Assembly: GCA_013239625.1 (NCBI GenBank)
Contig: MU055753.1
Span: forward strand, 2,224,702 to 2,288,701
Direction of reading: 5' to 3'
Source of the DNA: Lama guanicoe
Lineage: Eukaryota
DNA length: 64,000 bases
Shown: positions 36,716 to 49,259 of the stretch, in pieces
Layout of the letters: each line of letters starts with the position of its first letter
Position numbering within the stretch: position 1 is the first letter of the stretch
Made by a program: the position numbers and the translations under genes
Notes under the pieces: model-generated
Databases searched by the model: none
Told to the model about the DNA's origin: nothing
The model's input: the letters and a program-made list of their open reading frames with translations, nothing else

Positions 36716-36904
36716 CCCTGCAAGCTCGGCGGTCACTCAGGGCACGGCCCAGGTCTCTATAGAAGCCCTCCCGGCAGTAGTGGCAGTGCCGGCCAGCAGT
36801 ATTGTGCCGGCAGTTGAGGCAGACACCGCCACTGCGGCGGCCAGACAGTCGGTACAGCTCCATGTTGAAGCGGCAGCGGCGGGCATGGCCATTGCAGGAG
36901 CAAG
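36716..36904 (-). CDS. NTN3: Netrin-3 exon 2 (laminin EGF 2)
   Basis: [44 protein letters not shown]...ACR; 189 nt. Confidence 0.96.
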
Positions 36905-36975
36905 CTGCAGGGAAGGATGGGTCAGGGATAGGCTCGCCTGGTCTAAGATCCCCAGGCGACCCTCCAGGGCCTCAC

Positions 36976-37903
36976 CAAGGCAGGCGTGGGCTTCCCGGGC
37001 AGTGGCCCGCTGCCATGGCCTGTCGCAGTAGAAGGGCTTGCAGCGGCTGCAGTCCGGGCCCTCGGTGCCATGCCGGCAGTCGCAGATCAGATGGCCCTGG
37101 GGGTCCAGCAGGCACCTGGAGGCATGCCCATTGCACTTACAGCGCCCACCCACCTGGAGCTCAGTGGCAGAGTAGGAGTAAGGGACCATGGCTGTGGAGT
37201 CTCTGGTGTCCCCCAGCATGGTAGGCCTTGTGAGCACTATTTGAATGTCTGTGGCGGTCACCCAGTCTTGGAGCACTGGGCTGCTGTCCAGATCCAGGCC
37301 TGGCGGGCTGCCATCCTGCACGCTGAAGGCCAGAAGGCCACCACCGTCAGGCTGGGCCTGGGGCTCAGGGAAGCACAGGGCTTCAGGCCCCGGGCCAGCT
37401 GGGCCATTAGCAGGGGCAGGCAGGCGGCCGTAATCCAGGCCACAGCAGGAGGAGAAGAAGCCCAGTGGAGCCCAGCTTCGGCCATGGTCCTGAGACTTGA
37501 GCAGGGCCACGGAGGTTGGGGGTGGCGAGCAGAAGCGCAAGCTCACGAACACCAGCTCAAAAGCCTTGCCCAGGGGCACTGTGAGGGTCACGTTGAGGGG
37601 CACCTGCGTTAGCGAGTCCGAACGCCAGCATAGAGGGCTTGTGGTGCCCCCTGCGGAGGTTAGGAGGCTGGCAGGGTGTGCCCGCCGCGGATCGGAGGCG
37701 TCGCAGGCCCGCGTGGCCGGCCGCCCGCACGTGCTGGACGCCTGCACCTCGCGGCCCAAGGCCGCGTTCACCAGGCCGGGCACGCAGCCGCGGGGCGCGC
37801 CCCCCTCGTCATGGCAGGGGTCGGCGGGCGCCGGTGGCCCCGGGCTCAGGGCGGCCAAAAGCGTGCCCGCGGTCAGCAGCAGCCCCCAGGGCCAGCCGGG
37901 CAT
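36976..37903 (-). CDS. NTN3: Netrin-3 exon 1 (signal peptide, laminin N-terminal domain, LE1)
   Basis: [15 protein letters not shown]...[13 protein letters not shown]...HACL; donor G|gtgagg; 928 nt; six exons total 1743 nt = 580 aa. Confidence 0.97.
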
Positions 37904-38560
37904 GGCCGGAGCCGCCGTGGGTCAGCCAGCCAGCCGGGGTCCCACGCCACTGCCCTCGGGAGAGAGAGCCCGCTCCGAGGCTCTGCCTGCTGGTCCTCAA
38001 TGCGGAGCAACCAGAGCCCCCAAGCGGCCCTAGCCGGGGCCCAGAGGTGGGAGCAGCTGCGGGCACGCCCTGGCCGAGCGGAGCAGCGGGGATGTCGGTG
38101 AGTCCCCCCGCTGGGCCTGGAGCAATGACAGGCGTCGCCCCCGCTCTCGGTGCCTCCGCCTGCAGAGGCCCCACCCGCCACCCGCCGCTCGCACTCACCC
38201 ACCGAGGGCCGGGTAGAGCAGGTCTCCCAGCCTCCTGGGAAGGGCCAAGGGCAGGCGGGGCCTGGGGCGCCCCGGCCGCCGCCTCCTCCTGGCTGCAGCG
38301 AGGGCGGGCGAGCTGTGCCAGAAGGGGGTGGGGGGCGCAGCAGGCGCACGCCTGGGCCCAGCCGGGGGCGGGGCTGCTCGGGCCGTGAAGGAGGGAGGGG
38401 AAGGGAGGGGAGGGGGCCTCGTCGGCAGAGCCGGAATCAGAAGCAGATTCAGACACTGGCTGGGCCAGCGGGGGAGGGGGCTGGGAGGCCCTGGAGTCGG
38501 GGGAGGGGCTGGGGAGCCAGGAATGTGCTGGCGGGAGGGGTTGGAGGGGTGGCTCAGCCA
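37600..38560. promoter_or_regulatory. CpG island / GC-rich promoter of NTN3
   Basis: CpG-dense around and upstream of the ATG; GC boxes and G-runs at 38390-38550. Confidence 0.7.
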
Positions 38561-39000: not shown

Positions 39001-41149
39001 TTGGGTCCCTCCTGCCTCATGTTCAGGAAGGACTGCACCCCAGGACTGGCCTGAGCTCACCTAAGTGATGAAGCTGGCATTCCCCACTGGGATCAGGCCA
39101 AACTCTTGTCCCAAACCACCCCTGGGTCTCTGAGTGTCTACTTGCATCACCATGATGGGCATTAAAGCTGGCAGGGAGGAAGCTGGAGCTGTGCATGTAT
39201 GTGTGTGTGTATGTTGGGGTGGGGGGCAGGTATAGCCCAGTAGGTGACAGGGCCTTGGTCAGCTGTTGAGGACCTCCTGTGACAGGTAGGGAGTCTGGTT
39301 TGATCCATGGGGAGGGCCGAGTCACAGACGGTTCAGTGCTAGAACTCCTGAGTCCCAGCCACATCCTAGCAGGTTTGGGCAGGGAAACAGTCCAGCTGGG
39401 TAGCCTGAGCACCATCTGGGGGTGAGGCAGCTGCAACTAAGAATGGCCCCAGGCAAGAGGGGCCAGAAGTCGCTCTGGACAGAAAGACCCCTTCCCCATG
39501 ACCTTTAGGTCCTTGATGGAGGGAGCCAAGTATTTCAGGAAGGGTCAGCCCCATGCAGTGGGGGCAGGGAATACAGGAATACATCCTACCTGGGAGCAGC
39601 TCTGAGGCCTGAAGTTTCAGATGGGAGGCTGACCCCAGGCCAGGCCCAGCAGCAAGTGGAGGACACCATATGGGTGTCTGTGTAGGCTGGGGCTGCCACC
39701 CTCAGCTGGGCCAGAGATAGTGCAGGGATGGACAAGAAGAGGATGGAGAGAAGAAGAATCCTTCTGCTGTTTAGGAGAGGAGGGACAGGAGGGCACTGAA
39801 ACCTCCCAGGGTATACTGAAGAAGAGGAGGATGCAGGAGAGCTTGACTTTGGAAAAAGAGCAGCGGGAAGACTGGATGGTGGGGGAAGACAGTCACCCTC
39901 TGGTCAAGGCCCTTTCCCAGGCCTGAATAGCACACATTCAGCAGGGCAGGCAGGGTGGGTGGGGTGAAGGGACTGATGGGATGACAGACTTTAGAAGGAC
40001 TGAGACAGGAGGGCCACAGGGGCTGCTAGCCTCTCCCTTCACCTCTAACAACAACAGGAAGGCCAAGGGTGCCCCATGCCCCAGAAAGCAGGTGCCACAG
40101 GGACCTGTCCTTCAACTTCTCGATGAAGAGATTAAGCCCCTTGTAACAAACAGCCATGCATGAGTGAGGGAGCTGGCAGGGCACACAGTTCTGCTCTGGG
40201 ATGGGTGAGGTTCAGAAACAACACTTTTCCAACCATCCTCTTCAAGGTTTTTCTGATCATAAGCCTCAAAACTCGCTGGGATGGGAGGAGCCCTGGTGGG
40301 AGAGTGAGGGATGTGATAAATCCTTCTGGGATTGTTAGAAGCAAGGAGGTGGCCACAGTGGGGAGAAATGCACAGGCCCAACACAGTGGTTCCCCAGGGC
40401 CCGAGACAAGCCTCCAGCAAAACTGTGGCTATCTGGACTTCAGGAGTCCTTCCAGGAAGGAGGAAAGCAGGGAGCAGCTCTCCCTGCCCAGCATTGCAGG
40501 TTTTGTGTATGGCCCAGCCTCCTCATGAGTTGGGATTAGGGTCTGCAAAACATCTGGTGGCTTCTGGTGTGGGTATAAGGCCCCCAGAGCTCAGCCTGCA
40601 GTGTTGATCAGGGTCAGCTGGCACTACTAGCTCCCCAGGGAAGAGGCTGCAGGCAGCCCAGCCTCTTCCCTGGAACGGCCCTAGGGTATGCATTCTCTTC
40701 TGGTCCCTGGTGCAGCCCTGGCAGATGGTGTGATAGGAGTTATGAGGGGGCCTTCCCCACAGCACCCAACCCAGGATCATTTCTCCTTGTGGACTCAGCC
40801 ATCTGGCTCCGGCCCCTGAATAGAGCCTCTCACACCTCACAGTTCTCTGCAGGCCCTGCCCACTCTTGGCACCTTAGGAGAGGCTCCACCTCCAGGTCCC
40901 CACCTGTAACTCTTCAGGTGGCAGTCCCCCTACCCCCATCCTCGCCCCCATTTGGAGTGATAGTTGCTGGCTTTGGGGCTCAGGGAACCTATCTGGGAGA
41001 AAACGAAACGAGGGACCCTGACAGTCTCAAGCCTCAGGGGGCTGGGGTCTTTCCCTTAAAAGACCAACTGATCAAATACTCCAGGCCTAGCCCAGGATCC
41101 CACTGTTCATCAGACGCAAGCCACCACTTGTTCACATAAAGCACAAACA

Positions 41150-41155
41150 TTTATT
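41150..41155 (-). terminator. Candidate polyA signal of the TMEM100-like gene, inside an L2 3' tail
   Basis: Minus strand reads cataataggcactcAATAAAtgtttgtgctttatgtg; 446 nt after the stop codon. Confidence 0.5.
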
Positions 41156-41189
41156 GAGTGCCTATTATGCCTCGAGAGGCTTCCACCCC

Positions 41190-42070
41190 AGCGGGTAAGA
41201 CACAGCTCGGGAAGGGCGCCTCGTCCCGAGGAAGGTGGCCACGTCAAGTCCCCGGCCAGCTGCCGCCCCGCACCCTGCACACCCGGCAGGGCCCCTGTGC
41301 CGCGCATACTGCCGCCAGCCCCGCTCTGCGCGCCAAGCGAAACGCCGAAAAGCAACACTGGGCGGAGGAGGGGCGCGAGAAGGGGAGAGCCGAGTCTGGG
41401 GAGGGGAGGGAAATGACTCGTAGCCCACTAAAGCTCAGGCCTTCTAACGGTTCAGAACGATACAGTTTGGGGACAGGGTCTGGGGAGGTTTCCAGGACCC
41501 GCGAGCCGCACGCACTGCGCCAGCAGGCTGGGGCGAGGTCCGAAGGGAGGAGGCGCCGGCTCGCCGTGACCTCGCAGGGCAGAGGGATTGGCGCGCGGGC
41601 TCAGGGCGTCCCCGGCTCCTGCCGCCCCCCGCGCATGGCCCTCCGCCGCCGCCGAGCGCGCCAGCACAGGAAGGCGGCGGCCAGGAGCCCGAGGCCCGCG
41701 CCGAGTGCGGCCAGCGACGCGCTCTGGGCCAGGTCCAGGCGGGGTCCGCGCAGCGAGAAGGTGATGGCCGTGGCAGAGGCGCCAGCAAGGAGAGCCACGG
41801 CGCCGAAGGGCAGGACGCAGCGCGGCCACGAGCCCCCCGCGCCGCCGGTGGCCAAGAGCAGCGCGCGTAGGACCCCCGGGGGCTCGGCAGGGGCCGCGGG
41901 TGGGGGCTCGTGCGAGCTCATGCCTCCGACGCGGGGGCTGCGCTCGGGGTGGGTGTGGGCGCCCCTGCAGCCCCAGCTTGCCCGCCACGTCAGAGTGGAT
42001 TGGACGGTATGCGGTGACGGCAGTGGGAGGAGTTCGCCGCTGTCTCCTGGCATCGTGTGGGCGGGCGCTA
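41190..42070. promoter_or_regulatory. CpG island covering the TMEM100-like ORF, with promoter motifs
   Basis: CpG-dense; minus-strand CCAAT 42003-41999, TGACGTGG 41992-41985, GC/CACCC boxes 41946-41986. Confidence 0.7.
41601..41921 (-). CDS. Putative TMEM100/PIRT-family two-pass membrane protein, 106 aa (alternative in-frame ATG at 42053 gives 150 aa)
   Basis: LLLATGGAGGSWPRCVLPFGAVALLAGASATAITFS...LAALGAGLGLLAAAFLCWRARRRRR aligns to recalled TMEM100 LMAATGGTELSCYRCIIPFAVVVFIAGIVVTAVAYS...LVVLSSGLFLLASSALCWKVRQR; two hydrophobic helices and a polybasic tail; has its own CpG island. Confidence 0.75.
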   Translation of the reverse strand: MSSHEPPPAAPAEPPGVLRALLLATGGAGGSWPRCVLPFGAVALLAGASATAITFSLRGPRLDLAQSASLAALGAGLGLLAAAFLCWRARRRRRAMRGGRQEPGTP

Positions 42071-43650
42071 ATCCAGAGGTGAGGGTCTCCCTTTCCTGCC
42101 CTGGGTGCCCTGTGCCGAGGCCTCCCCAGGCCTCTCCCCTCGTGCTATCCACAGCGCCTCCCTGCCCTTGAAGGCCCAGGTGCTCACAGCAGACCGCAGG
42201 ACACCACCAGTGCCCAGGACTGGCCTCAGATGGGTGGGTCATTGAGTCAACAATTTCTGGGCACCCAGCTGGGCCTAGCTAGGGATGGAGGTGGACAGCA
42301 TCCCTGCCCAATAGAGAAGATACAAAATAAACCAAGTGAATTAGCGGAGGAAATGACTGTCATGGAGACCACCTGCTGTGGAAACTGATTCTGGGGTGGC
42401 TAGTAACAGGGTGGTGGTGGGATTTGCCCTGGAGATTAAGGGTTCCTCCAGATCCCCGCAGCTGAGCATAAGCTCTGGAGGCAGCAATGGAGTGGCCAGA
42501 AAGAGGTGCTTGTCCCCCAGGTAACCTCCCTCTCTTGCTCCCCCTACCCTGGAGTTCCACTCCCCAGAAGCCCCTCAGTGCAATGAATGCCCTGGTTTTT
42601 TATTTCCTACTTTGGTCTGTCATCTGGTCCCCAGCAGCCCAAAAGACCTAGGACTCCATGTTCAAGGTTTCTGGCCTGCTGACTTTTACAACTAGGGCCT
42701 CCTGCAGGATGGGGCCACCCCGAGGCTACTTCAGCATCACCCAGTTCATTCCCCCATATCTCGAACACTTCATCAGGCTCTCATAAGACTGGGCCTTCTC
42801 AGGAATGAGCTGCCTCCAGGGCCTGAGTCTCTCAGGGAGGAAGCGGGTGTTACTTGGTCTTGCACATCAATGTTCACACAAAGGGCTAGTGCGCCAGCTC
42901 TGCGGGTTGTGCTTGGCCCACACGGGTGCTCAGTAGATTCATGTTAGTTACACCAATGCCTCCCAGCCCCCATCAAGGCCCAGAGCTGTGAAGCATCTAA
43001 CATCATCTTGATTCATCTTCACCCCAGCCCCAGTGGTAATAACCACTGTCCCAGTATGACAATGGGGACTGAGGCTCAAAATCATTGAGAATCTTGCTGA
43101 AAGTCCCACAGCAGCAGACAAGTTATAATGTCAACCCACGATCTGACTTTGACCTCTACACTTTCTTGCCTTCTAGGAAACAATGATTCCTTCAGCAGGG
43201 TAGGTGGGAGCCTCAGAGGTAATAATGGAGCAAAGGAGGTGATGGGCCCTTTCCCTGGAGGTGGCTCAGTGCGGAAGGCCCACACCAGCCACTAGCAACG
43301 GCACAGCACAGGAGGTGGTAGTGGGCACAGGCACCAGGAGACATGGCTGCCCACTATGATAGAGGCTTGTGGCTTTTTTGTGCCCAGTACAAATCTAGGA
43401 ACTTGTGGGGAGGGGTTTCAGGTGTGCCAGGGCCAGTGCATGAAGTGAGTCCCCAGTGCGGCCCACCTTGAGTGGCCTTGCCCCCTCCTTTCACTACAGA
43501 AGGAATATGCCTGTTCTTGGTAAATACGCTTCATAAATTCTCAGTAAGTAAAAACAAACAAACAAACAAAAAAAACAAAAGGAAGAAAACAAACAAACAC
43601 CAAATCCAACCTTGGTATGATTTAAATATATATATACTTCCTAATGTAGT

Positions 43651-43656
43651 TTTAAT
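43651..43656 (-). terminator. Candidate TEDC2 polyA signal ATTAAA
   Basis: ATTAAA on minus followed by a long U/GU-rich tract (43550-43600). Confidence 0.55.
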
Positions 43657-44066: not shown

Positions 44067-44216
44067 TCAGTCAGCAGGCTCATCTTCTCGGAGGATGGTG
44101 AGGAAGCGCTCGCCCCCCTCGCAGAGTAGGCTGTGCACAGCCCGGCACAGTGCCAGCCAGGGCGGCCCCAGGGGCTCCTGCTCCCTCACCAGGGGGAGGA
44201 GTTCAGCCATCAGGAC
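44067..44216 (-). CDS. TEDC2: TEDC2 exon 10 (stop)
   Basis: VLMAELLPLVREQEPLGPPWLALCRAVHSLLCEGGERFLTILREDEPAD*; 150 nt. Confidence 0.93.
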   Translation of the reverse strand, partial: VLMAELLPLVREQEPLGPPWLALCRAVHSLLCEGGERFLTILREDEPAD

Positions 44217-47512: not shown

Positions 47513-47753
47513 CTGTGAAGACACAGGGCAGCCGTGGTGGCACGGTCAGGAGGGAGGGCCCAGGTCCAAAACCACCCCCGCCCCGACGCCTAGCCTAGGA
47601 GCAGTCCCCGGGCCTGCAGGGGAAAGCCGGGGGAACACTGACAACCGGCAACTCGGAAGTGAGCGTTGGGCTCGGCCTCCCGGCCCAGGGGCTCTAATTT
47701 GGGTTCTGACGGTCCTAGAGAGGCCTAGTTGGGTGGTTTCGGGGTCCGCATAC

Positions 47754-47852
47754 CAGGCTCTAAGCAGCCGCCGGGAGATTCGCAGGCTCCGTTCCAGCTG
47801 CCGCTGTCGCTGGGCGCAGGAATCCAGGGCATCCCGCAGCTCGGCCACCAGC
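47754..47852 (-). CDS. TEDC2: TEDC2 exon 2
   Basis: LVAELRDALDSCAQRQRQLERSLRISRRLLRA; 99 nt. Confidence 0.92.
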
Positions 47853-47934
47853 CTGGGAGGGACGCACCCGCAGCTCAGCACCCGACGGGCCTCGGGCCGC
47901 GCGCCCTCCCGCCCCCTCCCCCCCCCCTCCCCCC

Positions 47935-47960
47935 CCGTCCAAGCAGTCCGCGGGCAGCAT
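47935..47960 (-). CDS. TEDC2: TEDC2 exon 1 (start codon; expected donor absent in this sequence)
   Basis: MLPADC resembles recalled human MLPAGC; phase requires a 26-nt exon, but GG follows instead of GT. Confidence 0.6.
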
Positions 47961-49259
47961 GAAGACTGTTGCAATTCTTCGCTATTTGCCGCTGCCGGAG
48001 AATCCCTCCTCTTCCGGCTAGAAGATCACCTCCTTCCGCCCGCGCTACCCAATCCCGAGCCGAGCTCAGGGCCCGCCCTCTCCGACGACTGTCCAGTGGC
48101 AAACCCCGCCCCTCCCCCGGCGGTTGTGAAAGTGAGCCCCGACCCGGGGCAGTGCAGGGAACTCAGGTGAGAACCTCGAATTGTGAGCAGGCTTCTGGTT
48201 TAGATAACTGGGTAGATGGTGGCACCTGTAGTTGCTTAACGGCTGGCTTCGTCTTTGTATTGAAGGCGATCTAAAGCAGGGCCCAGCTGCCTTGCTGACC
48301 CCGGGCCTCCTAGCACAGGGCAAGGCACGGGAGGGGCCCAATTGATATTTACTGCAGGAACCGTCGCTAGAGGTGAGGATAACGTGTGTTGGAAGCAGGG
48401 ACAAGGGAGTGTTCACTTTTGGACATGCTAGTGAGGTGATGAGCCATTAGTAGTCACCTAGGTAGAGGGGGATGAAGTCCGGCAGACAAGGGTGTGGCAC
48501 ATGAGCAATGGGCCTGGGCAAGATGGTACAAGGTGCGGCAGGTGTCCGTGGACAGGGACAGGTGAGGGGGAGCTGGCGCCCAGACAGGTGGAGGGATGGC
48601 AGAGCCTGGTGTCATAGAAACAACAGGAGGCTATCCCAGGAGGAAGTGTCCACTTAATGGGAGAATGGGGCTTTCAGTGACTCAGGAGACACCTGGGGAG
48701 GGGGATTTTGGGGACAGTTGCTAGCTGGGAGGAGTGATGCAGGTAGCAGGGCCCAAAATAAAAAGGCAACAGGGGCCAAGAAATCTCAGGGGATAGCAGG
48801 AGGGATGACAAACGGGGGGGGGGTTGTGTGTGGAGAGGTGTCCATTTCACAGTTGCTAATGGGAAGGTGCTGCAGCATGGCAGACAGACATGAAGGAGGG
48901 GAGCCAAGGGTGCCAGGCAGAGAAGAGGGGATGGGTTGGGACCCAGGCAGCCCTGGGACTGTTCTTAGGGTGGGTCCCTCCATCAGTAGTGGCCTGTTTT
49001 CTTGCCTAGTTGTGGCAGGCTGACAGCATTACTGCCTAAAATGATTCTCTGTGAGGTAGGAGGGGAGGGGGAAAGGGCTTCAGCCAGCACTTAAGACACA
49101 GGGAGACCCCACACCACAGCCAGGTGGTATTAGGTCCCATTGGAGTGGCTTCCTCCTACAGGTGCAGGCTGGGAGAAGGCAGAGAACTTTTGGATTTTGA
49201 AAAGTGGCCATGGACAAGGGGACAAGGCAGTTCAAATATGCACATCACTCAGCTGCTAC

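What the first reader, a model, noticed from the sequence alone, without database searches (positions are those of the whole stretch)
41601..41921. Hidden intronless TMEM100/PIRT-family paralog between TEDC2 and NTN3
Seen: an intact 106-aa minus-strand ORF (ATG context GGCATGA) with two hydrophobic helices (about aa 36-57 and 65-87), a short loop and a CWRARRRRR polybasic tail, in a CpG island that belongs to neither neighbour. Knowledge: aligned by eye to human TMEM100 as I recall it, the motifs ATGG, S..RC..PF, AG...TA...S, GL.LLA...LCW and the basic tail are colinear with one single-residue gap (about 28 of 70 identities). TMEM100 also has an intronless CDS. It is an ALK1/BMP9 target in endothelium and a TRPA1-TRPV1 adaptor in DRG neurons, acting through a basic C-terminal motif. 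PIRT binds PIP2 and TRPV1 through a similar tail. Inference: this is a separate, little-described family member and a possible TRP-channel or phosphoinositide adaptor. I know no named gene at this position, though it may exist as an uncharacterised LOC model.
Basis: partly seen in the sequence, partly recalled or inferred. Interest (0 to 1): 0.9.

Follow-up and report, generated by a model that had tools for sequence, protein, structure and literature searches.

The report
Unstudied mammalian TMEM100-like membrane gene
A small single-exon gene between TEDC2 and NTN3 encodes a conserved two-helix membrane protein that is an ancient, unstudied sister of the pain- and blood-vessel-related protein TMEM100, already predicted in some genomes as "TMEM100-like" but never characterised.

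Summary
Window 41601-41921 (minus strand) is an intact 106-codon ORF in its own CpG island, between TEDC2 (last coding exon 44067-44210) and NTN3 (first coding exon 36737-37903). All three genes are on the minus strand.

It is a real coding gene. It matches Pfam TMEM100 (PF16311) at 66.5 bits against a cutoff of 34. Intact orthologues occur across placentals and a marsupial, with more distant ones in birds, reptiles, a chimaera and fishes. Against a caprine-like genomic copy, core dN/dS is 0.12 and the only CDS indels are two of 3 nt, while the flanks carry frame-breaking indels.

It is not TMEM100 itself (38% identity). An origin as a recent duplicate of amniote TMEM100 is rejected (AU test).

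PIRT membership is not supported: no PF15099 hit in 13 proteins.

RefSeq already models the gene as "transmembrane protein 100-like" in several mammals. I found no paper on the mammalian gene.

Function as a TMEM100-style adaptor with a cytosolic polybasic tail is inference only. The scan's earlier notes concern this same window only, not other DNA.

Verdict: new member of a known kind, moderate interest.

The parts
41601..41921 (-). Complete single-exon CDS (106 codons plus stop) of the TMEM100-like gene
   Evidence: ORF. Pfam PF16311 at 66.5 bits. Orthologues at 64-94% identity. Core dN/dS 0.12 and only 3-nt indels against L001. The start Met is conserved in 16 of 17 aligned mammalian proteins.
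41922..42110 (-). Putative TATA-less CpG-island promoter and short 5' leader. Blocks conserved with L001: GC box 42057-42068, CCAAT 41999-42003, CACCC-rich block 41946-41960.
   Evidence: Window/L001 alignment, coordinates from the ruler. Naming these blocks as promoter elements is inference; the TSS was not mapped.
41131..41600 (-). Putative 3' UTR (about 450 nt)
   Evidence: 77-78% identity to L001, with 1-, 2-, 4-, 5-, 6- and 15-nt indels, so it is non-coding. It ends at the poly(A) signal.
41150..41155 (-). Canonical AATAAA poly(A) signal followed by a GT-rich element
   Evidence: It is the only AATAAA or ATTAAA on the minus strand between the stop codon and position 38000.
41000..42200 (.). 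CpG island that holds the gene
   Evidence: CpG o/e 0.72-0.89 and GC up to 0.79, against o/e 0.06-0.23 on both sides.
44067..44210 (-). Neighbour: last coding exon of TEDC2 (context only)
   Evidence: Pfam DUF4693, profile positions 242-284 of 285, E 3e-22. Minus-strand poly(A) signals at 43651 and 42599 lie before the island.
36737..37903 (-). Neighbour: first coding exon of NTN3 (context only)
   Evidence: Laminin_N at E 2.9e-39, plus a laminin EGF domain.

Best explanation
This is a genuine single-exon protein-coding gene. It is the mammalian member of an ancient vertebrate sister lineage of TMEM100, here called TMEM100-like. It appears to have its own CpG-island promoter and its own AATAAA about 450 nt after the stop codon, which predicts an mRNA of roughly 0.8-1 kb. 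That would sit between the 3' end of TEDC2 and the promoter of NTN3, all on one strand. The 106-aa product is a helical hairpin: a short amphipathic helix, TM1, a loop of 6-8 residues, then TM2 running into an Arg-rich tail. By the positive-inside rule both termini face the cytosol (inference). Two family-invariant cysteines would sit at the cytosolic ends of TM1 and TM2. By homology with TMEM100, it most likely acts as a small auxiliary or adaptor subunit, using its juxtamembrane polybasic tail on acidic lipids or on partner membrane proteins. This last step is inferred, not shown. Shown here: the ORF, family membership, conservation and purifying selection. Inferred: topology, transcript ends, adaptor function.
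For: - Family match: Pfam PF16311 at E 2.4e-18, 66.5 bits against a cutoff of 34. All 12 orthologues scanned also match it. hhalign against TMEM100 proper gives 98.7%, E 3.4e-16.
- Orthologues: 33 relatives at 64-94% identity, including Rangifer, Capra, Vulpes, Ursus, Marmota, Dipodomys, Peromyscus and the marsupial Gracilinanus. There are 35 invariant columns in the core, while the N-terminus varies by whole-residue indels.
- Deeper relatives: the exhaustive profile search finds bird, gecko, tortoise, chimaera, bichir and teleost relatives ahead of TMEM100 proper.
- Tree: TMEM100-like is split from TMEM100 by a branch with 99/98 support. Grouping the mammalian genes with amniote TMEM100 costs 53.7 lnL units and is rejected.
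- Selection against caprine-like L001: dN/dS 0.36 overall and 0.12 in the core (16 synonymous against 5 non-synonymous changes, binomial p 3.5e-5). Differences by codon position are 12/5/20. The CDS is 88% identical with only two 3-nt indels, while the flanks are 73-79% identical with frame-breaking indels.
- Protein shape: hydropathy and charge. An AlphaFold2 model of orthologue P0001 has helices at 16-25, 29-58 and 65-102, mean pLDDT 70.
- Gene boundaries: CpG island, poly(A) signal and conserved promoter blocks.
Against: - There is no direct evidence of transcription or translation in this species.
- Only one orthologous DNA sequence was available, so dN/dS rests on a single pair.
- The mammalian clade sits on a long stem (length 1.02) and shows a strong GC-driven amino-acid shift: G+A+R+P is 0.50 of the core, against 0.23-0.29 in non-mammals. 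Function may therefore have drifted.
- The AU test does not reject a tree in which the mammalian genes fall outside the non-mammalian TMEM100-like group (p 0.24).
- Two database proteins (P0108, P0130) look like decayed copies, so some lineages may have lost the gene.
- Nothing here tests binding to any partner.
Confidence: 0.85

Rival explanations
1. The ORF is a chance open frame in a GC-rich CpG island, for example an alternative NTN3 promoter or an enhancer, and encodes nothing.
For: At 73-79% GC stop codons are rare. Overlapping open frames of 337, 213, 178 and 114 aa exist at the same place. No RNA evidence was obtained.
Against: The ORF matches Pfam above threshold. The protein is conserved from a chimaera to mammals. 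Core dN/dS is 0.12, differences follow third-position periodicity, and CDS indels are 3-nt only while the flanks carry frame-breaking indels.
Confidence: 0.03
2. It is a recent duplicate, retrocopy or processed pseudogene of TMEM100.
For: The CDS is intronless, like that of TMEM100 (the latter from general knowledge, not tested here). It belongs to the same Pfam family.
Against: Identity to mammalian TMEM100 is only 38%. It has its own orthologues in birds, reptiles and a chimaera, which share a loop one residue longer than that of TMEM100 proper, a Ser-Trp where TMEM100 has Ser-Cys, and a distinct C-terminal end. The AU test rejects a clade of the mammalian genes with amniote TMEM100 (lnL difference 53.7). 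The ORF is intact and under purifying selection.
Confidence: 0.02
3. The coding sequence is real but is not an independent gene. It is expressed only as part of TEDC2 read-through transcripts or of an upstream exon of NTN3 transcripts, or from an upstream in-frame ATG (42053 or 42242) as a longer protein.
For: All three genes are co-oriented and close: about 2.1 kb from the TEDC2 stop and about 3.7 kb to the NTN3 ATG. The frame stays open upstream to 42242. Some automatic models start further upstream (P0002 at 185 aa, P0012 at 168 aa).
Against: Minus-strand poly(A) signals at 43651 and 42599 would end TEDC2 before the island, and an AATAAA at 41155-41150 follows the ORF. The stretch upstream of the conserved ATG differs from L001 by 1-, 1-, 11- and 15-nt indels, and L001 has no upstream in-frame ATG. 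Upstream extensions differ between species, whereas the Met at 41921 is shared.
Confidence: 0.1

Closest known systems
TMEM100 (Pfam PF16311). A two-transmembrane protein and ALK1/BMP9-dependent endothelial gene, and a regulator of the TRPA1-TRPV1 complex in sensory neurons (PMC10077888, PMC10045937, and Somekawa 2012 as cited in PMC13766674).
   Same: Both belong to the same Pfam family. Both are two-helix hairpins of about 100-135 aa. They share the motifs A-T-G-G before TM1, R-C-x-x-P-F-G at the start of TM1, and Cys-Trp followed by a basic run after TM2.
   Different: Identity is only 38%. The loop is one residue longer and has a different motif. It has Ser-Trp where TMEM100 has Ser-Cys. 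It lacks TMEM100's long N-terminus and its conserved C-terminal extension, and ends soon after the basic run. It forms a separate clade that split before the gnathostome radiation. No functional data exist for it.
RefSeq and UniProt automatic models named 'transmembrane protein 100-like', 'TMEM100' or 'TM100 protein'. Examples: XP_026340861 (Ursus), XP_004403341 (Odobenus), XP_028709761 (Peromyscus), and models for Dipodomys and Gracilinanus. Chicken XP_001232349 is the same kind of model in a bird.
   Same: The mammalian models are orthologues of the window gene at 66-94% identity. The chicken protein is 50% identical (49 of 98) and has the same loop and tail motifs.
   Different: These are predictions without characterisation. 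In birds the name 'TMEM100' is attached both to this lineage (P0161) and to true TMEM100 (P0159). One paper lists chicken LOC770617 'TMEM100-like' as induced in the laying-hen magnum (PMC8088581). I could not verify that this LOC is P0161.
PIRT (Pfam PF15099), a two-TM regulator of TRPV1/TRPM8 that binds phosphoinositides.
   Same: The likeness is only general: a small two-TM protein with a basic C-terminal region. This is from general knowledge and was not tested here.
   Different: There is no detectable sequence relationship. No PIRT hit appeared at E<=10 for the window protein or for 12 orthologues.

Membership tests
TMEM100 family (Pfam PF16311) | Match to the family HMM above the curated gathering score | tested here: met
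   66.5 bits against a cutoff of 34, E 2.4e-18, aa 21-97 on profile positions 42-118 of 133. 12 of 12 orthologues match. hhalign against TMEM100 proper gives 98.7%.
TMEM100 family (Pfam PF16311) | Two transmembrane helices forming a hairpin with a short loop | tested here: met
   Kyte-Doolittle peaks at aa 35-57 and 66-88. The AF2 model of orthologue P0001 has helices 29-58 and 65-102 and a loop at 59-64, mean pLDDT 70. Membrane insertion itself was not tested.
TMEM100 family (Pfam PF16311) | Family-invariant motifs: T-G-G before TM1, C-x-x-x-F-G in TM1, and a Cys (followed by a nearly invariant Trp) plus a basic run after TM2 | tested here: met
   Invariant or nearly invariant columns in the 28-sequence family alignment A3. 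All are present in the window protein.
TMEM100 family (Pfam PF16311) | Coding sequence in a single exon | tested here: met
   The uninterrupted ORF is colinear from Met to stop with full-length orthologue proteins. That TMEM100 itself is intronless is general knowledge, not tested here.
TMEM100 proper (orthologue of the named gene) | Groups with TMEM100 orthologues in a tree and shares the TMEM100 loop and C-terminal motifs | tested here: not met
   It falls in a separate clade across a 99/98 branch. A clade with amniote TMEM100 is rejected. The loop and tail motifs differ.
TMEM100 proper (function) | Binds and modulates TRPA1-TRPV1; induced by BMP9/ALK1 | not testable with these tools
PIRT family (Pfam PF15099) | Match to the family HMM | tested here: not met
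   No hit at E<=10 for the window protein or for any of 12 orthologues.

The most novel reading that the evidence does not exclude
Mammals carry a second, functionally unexplored TMEM100-type adaptor. In the clusters I could inspect it had no named model from the main model organisms. Like TMEM100, it would tune ion-channel complexes (TRPA1/TRPV1-type) or receptor signalling through its juxtamembrane polybasic tail. It might be co-regulated with the adjacent NTN3, and it could mask or modify TMEM100 loss-of-function phenotypes.
Probability: 0.12. Interest if true: 0.75.

Novelty: new member of a known kind. Interest (0 to 1): 0.5.

Why it matters
TMEM100 is studied as a pain target (TRPA1-TRPV1 disinhibition; the T100-Mut peptide) and as an ALK1/BMP9 effector in blood vessels. 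The searchable literature treats it as a protein without close relatives. A conserved sister gene with the same hairpin and basic tail is an obvious candidate for redundancy, for off-target effects of TMEM100-derived peptides, and for unexplained residual phenotypes. It can be tested directly by expression mapping, tagging, knockout, and channel or lipid-binding assays. It also shows how small single-exon genes in very GC-rich islands escape consistent annotation: some species have models, naming is inconsistent, and start codons vary between models.

Tried and rejected
I therefore fetched no orthologue loci and made no synteny check in other species.
- The look-up of sequencing runs listed holders, but none on record as RNA. 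Some very small runs (59-98 million letters) hold 97% of the sampled words. That suggests enrichment of this locus, by RNA or by a CpG-island-biased assay, but it is ambiguous and I do not use it as evidence.
- The metagenome scan returned only one locus (L001, caprine-like), so dN/dS rests on one pair.
- PIRT membership is rejected.
- An origin as a retrocopy or recent duplicate is rejected.
- An N-terminally extended protein from the upstream ATGs is judged unlikely.
- The first AU test, with the mammalian genes held outside the non-mammalian TMEM100-like group, was not decisive (p 0.24).
- Literature searches for TMEM100-like, TMEM100L, TMEM100B, and TMEM100 with PhyloCSF, paralog or NTN3 found no paper on the mammalian gene. 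The 'TMEM100B' mentions look like slips for TMEM100.
- Fold search was not run, because a two-helix hairpin gives uninformative matches.
- P0010 may be of primate or human origin. I fetched, saved and compared no contig for it, and I did not examine the human locus.

Full report
**Observation**

The minus strand of window 41601-41921 holds an intact ORF of 106 codons. The ATG is at 41921 (context ggaggcATGagc). Hydropathy gives two hydrophobic segments at about aa 35-57 and 66-88. They are separated by a short loop (aa 58-66), and an Arg-rich tail of net charge +7 follows.

The ORF lies in a CpG island of about 1.2 kb (41000-42200, GC up to 0.79, CpG o/e 0.72-0.89). CpG-poor DNA flanks it on both sides (o/e 0.06-0.23).

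- TEDC2 exons (Pfam DUF4693) run on the minus strand from 47267 down to 44067. The last coding exon, 44067-44210, reaches profile position 284 of 285.
- A netrin exon with Laminin_N and a laminin EGF domain lies at 36737-37903, also on the minus strand.

The three genes are therefore co-oriented. ORF length by itself means little here, because the same GC-rich stretch carries overlapping open frames of 337, 213, 178 and 114 aa.

**Is it coding?**

Several independent lines say yes.

1. The protein matches Pfam TMEM100 (PF16311) at 66.5 bits against a curated cutoff of 34 (E 2.4e-18).
2. A word-indexed search of 5.8 billion proteins found 33 relatives at 64-94% identity. All carry PF16311. They come from Rangifer, Capra, Vulpes, Marmota, Dipodomys and the marsupial Gracilinanus among others. 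Cluster look-ups added RefSeq 'transmembrane protein 100-like' models from Ursus, Odobenus and Peromyscus.
3. In an alignment of 17 mammalian proteins, 35 columns of the core are invariant. The first 20 or so residues vary by whole-residue indels, and the start Met is shared by 16 of the 17.
4. The single orthologous DNA I could obtain is L001, a 1961-bp caprine-like genomic contig from a metagenome. It is colinear with the window far beyond the ORF.
   - Nei-Gojobori counts give dN/dS 0.36 for the whole CDS and 0.12 for aa 17-91. In that core there are 16 synonymous against 5 non-synonymous differences (binomial p 3.5e-5).
   - Differences by codon position are 12/5/20.
   - The CDS is 88% identical with only two indels, both of 3 nt. 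The 5' flank, the 3' UTR and the DNA beyond it are 73-79% identical, with indels of 1, 2, 4, 5, 6, 11, 15 and 23 nt.

**Which gene is it?**

An exhaustive HMMER profile search of 1.84 billion representatives returned 71 proteins in tiers:
- Mammals scored below E 1e-45.
- Birds, a gecko, a tortoise and the chimaera Callorhinchus scored between 1e-31 and 1e-25.
- Bichir and teleost proteins scored between 1e-17 and 1e-12.
- TMEM100 proper appeared only after these, from about 1e-12. It includes a rodent TMEM100, a pigeon TMEM100 and a lamprey protein.

A maximum-likelihood tree (53 rows, 97 columns) separates TMEM100 proper from a TMEM100-like clade by a branch with 99/98 support. The mammalian genes form a 100/100 group next to the sauropsid genes, with the chimaera outside them (97/98).

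The window protein is 38% identical (31 of 82) to a mammalian TMEM100. It is 50% identical (49 of 98) to the chicken TMEM100-like protein. With the latter it shares a loop one residue longer than in TMEM100 proper, Ser-Trp where TMEM100 has Ser-Cys, and the same C-terminal end.

Two AU tests bear on orthology:
- Holding the mammalian genes together with amniote TMEM100, that is a recent duplicate or retrocopy, costs 53.7 log-likelihood units and is rejected. I named that group after seeing the tree.
- A tree in which the mammalian genes fall just outside the non-mammalian TMEM100-like group is not rejected (p 0.24).

One-to-one orthology with the bird and fish genes is therefore the best-supported reading. 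It rests on the ML tree and the shared signatures, not on a decisive test.

The duplication predates the split of cartilaginous and bony vertebrates. That is compatible with the companion note's ohnologue idea (s1-860050), but it does not prove it.

**Family membership**

TMEM100-family membership is met on every sequence criterion I could test:
- the HMM score;
- profile-profile comparison at 98.7% probability, E 3.4e-16, 41% identity over 76 columns;
- hairpin architecture;
- invariant motifs;
- an uninterrupted CDS.

It is not TMEM100 itself. PIRT membership fails: no PF15099 hit at E<=10 for the window protein or for 12 orthologues.

**Anatomy and likely mechanism**

The gene looks like an independent, compact transcription unit.
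- *Upstream:* blocks conserved with L001 lie within 150 nt of the ATG. They are a GC box at 42057-42068, CCAAT at 41999-42003 and a CACCC-rich block at 41946-41960.
- *TEDC2 3' end:* candidate poly(A) signals at 43651 and 42599 lie before the island.
- *Downstream:* the only AATAAA between the stop codon and 38000 is at 41155-41150. A GT-rich element follows it.
- *Upstream ATGs:* in-frame ATGs at 42053 and 42242 are unlikely starts. That stretch differs from L001 by frame-breaking indels, and L001 has no ATG there.

An AlphaFold2 model of the 89%-identical Rangifer orthologue, built on the 28-sequence family alignment, gives three helices: 16-25, 29-58 and 65-102. A six-residue loop separates the last two. 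Mean pLDDT is 70.

With a +7 tail and a +1 loop, the positive-inside rule puts both termini in the cytosol. This is inference, and it is the topology I recall being described for TMEM100 (not checked in the papers read here). Two cysteines invariant across the whole family would then flank the cytosolic ends of TM1 and TM2. Acylation of these cysteines is a reasonable but untested idea.

By homology, the most likely role is a small auxiliary or adaptor subunit whose juxtamembrane basic tail contacts acidic lipids or partner membrane proteins. TMEM100 is reported to loosen the TRPA1-TRPV1 complex, and a TMEM100 mutant (Tmem100-3Q) and the peptide derived from it have the opposite effect (PMC10077888; PMC10013686). 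I put about 0.4 on a generic adaptor role and about 0.12 on a TRP-specific one.

**Caveats**

- The mammalian clade sits on a long stem (1.02 substitutions per column).
- Its core composition has shifted strongly. G+A+R+P make up 0.50 of the core, against 0.23-0.29 in birds, fishes and TMEM100. F+Y+M+I+N+K make up 0.06, against 0.11-0.30. GC at third codon positions is 0.90. The TM helices are therefore Ala/Gly/Leu-rich and only moderately hydrophobic (peak 1.9-2.0).
- Bichir, many teleost and, after an extra Met, chicken proteins start with Met-Gly-Cys. This looks like a dual-acylation signal, and the mammalian proteins lack it.
- The human locus was not examined. P0010 may be primate or human, and no contig of it was fetched or compared.

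**Novelty**

The gene is already predicted as 'TMEM100-like' in several RefSeq genomes. In birds the label 'TMEM100' is used for both lineages.

I found no paper on the mammalian gene. One chicken RNA-seq table lists LOC770617 'TMEM100-like' as induced in the laying-hen magnum.

In the clusters I could inspect, none of the rodent clusters that appear on many contigs carried an NCBI or UniRef name. Not all clusters could be inspected, so 'unannotated in the main model organisms' remains a lead, not a result.

I class the finding as a new member of a known kind: real, conserved, uncharacterised and of moderate interest.

Noticed in passing
proteins P0108 (186 aa) and P0130 (67 aa), both from Logan assemblies only: Both look like decayed copies of this gene. 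The first half is out of frame, and radical replacements sit in the TM helices. This suggests loss of the gene in at least one unidentified lineage. The tail of P0108 resembles that of P0010.
   Followed up: partly
window 41601-41650 (-) and proteins P0010, P0019 (Dipodomys), P0012 (Marmota): In these three proteins the reading frame after the basic run continues in what is the +1 frame of the window. This gives a longer, unrelated C-terminal tail in place of the short conserved end. The basic run is kept in all of them.
   Followed up: partly
alignment A3; proteins P0082, P0085, P0095, P0101, P0161: Bichir and many teleost TMEM100-like proteins begin with Met-Gly-Cys, and the chicken protein has it after an extra Met. 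This is a likely myristoylation-plus-palmitoylation signal. Mammalian proteins begin with a Pro-rich stretch and lack it.
   Followed up: no
window 41601-41921 (-) compared with non-mammalian orthologues: There is a strong GC-driven amino-acid shift in mammals. G+A+R+P make up 0.50 of the core against 0.23-0.29 elsewhere, and GC3 is 0.90. This matches the long mammalian stem branch in the tree.
   Followed up: partly
window about 41325-41360 (-), inside the putative 3' UTR: The C-terminal end of the read-through model P0108 matches the translation of this window stretch (the ORF at 41110-41358). A short 3' UTR block therefore seems conserved between distant species.
   Followed up: no
proteins P0161 (chicken XP_001232349, 123 aa) and P0159 (Caloenas, 134 aa): In birds, two different genes carry the name 'TMEM100' or 'TM100 protein': the TMEM100-like lineage and true TMEM100. 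This is a naming trap for expression studies.
   Followed up: partly
window 47546-47974 (-), TEDC2 first exon region: The frame holding the conserved N-terminal helix of TEDC2 has no ATG upstream of that helix. An ATG-initiated ORF (47760-47960) is in another frame, across a G-rich run. This could be an assembly indel in the G-rich run or a lineage difference. My comparison rests on memory of the human protein and is unverified.
   Followed up: no
Sequencing-run output, runs X15-X17: Runs of only 59-98 million letters hold 97% of the sampled words of 41401-42100. That implies enrichment of this locus, either as RNA or in a CpG-island-biased assay. The kind of library is not on record.
   Followed up: no
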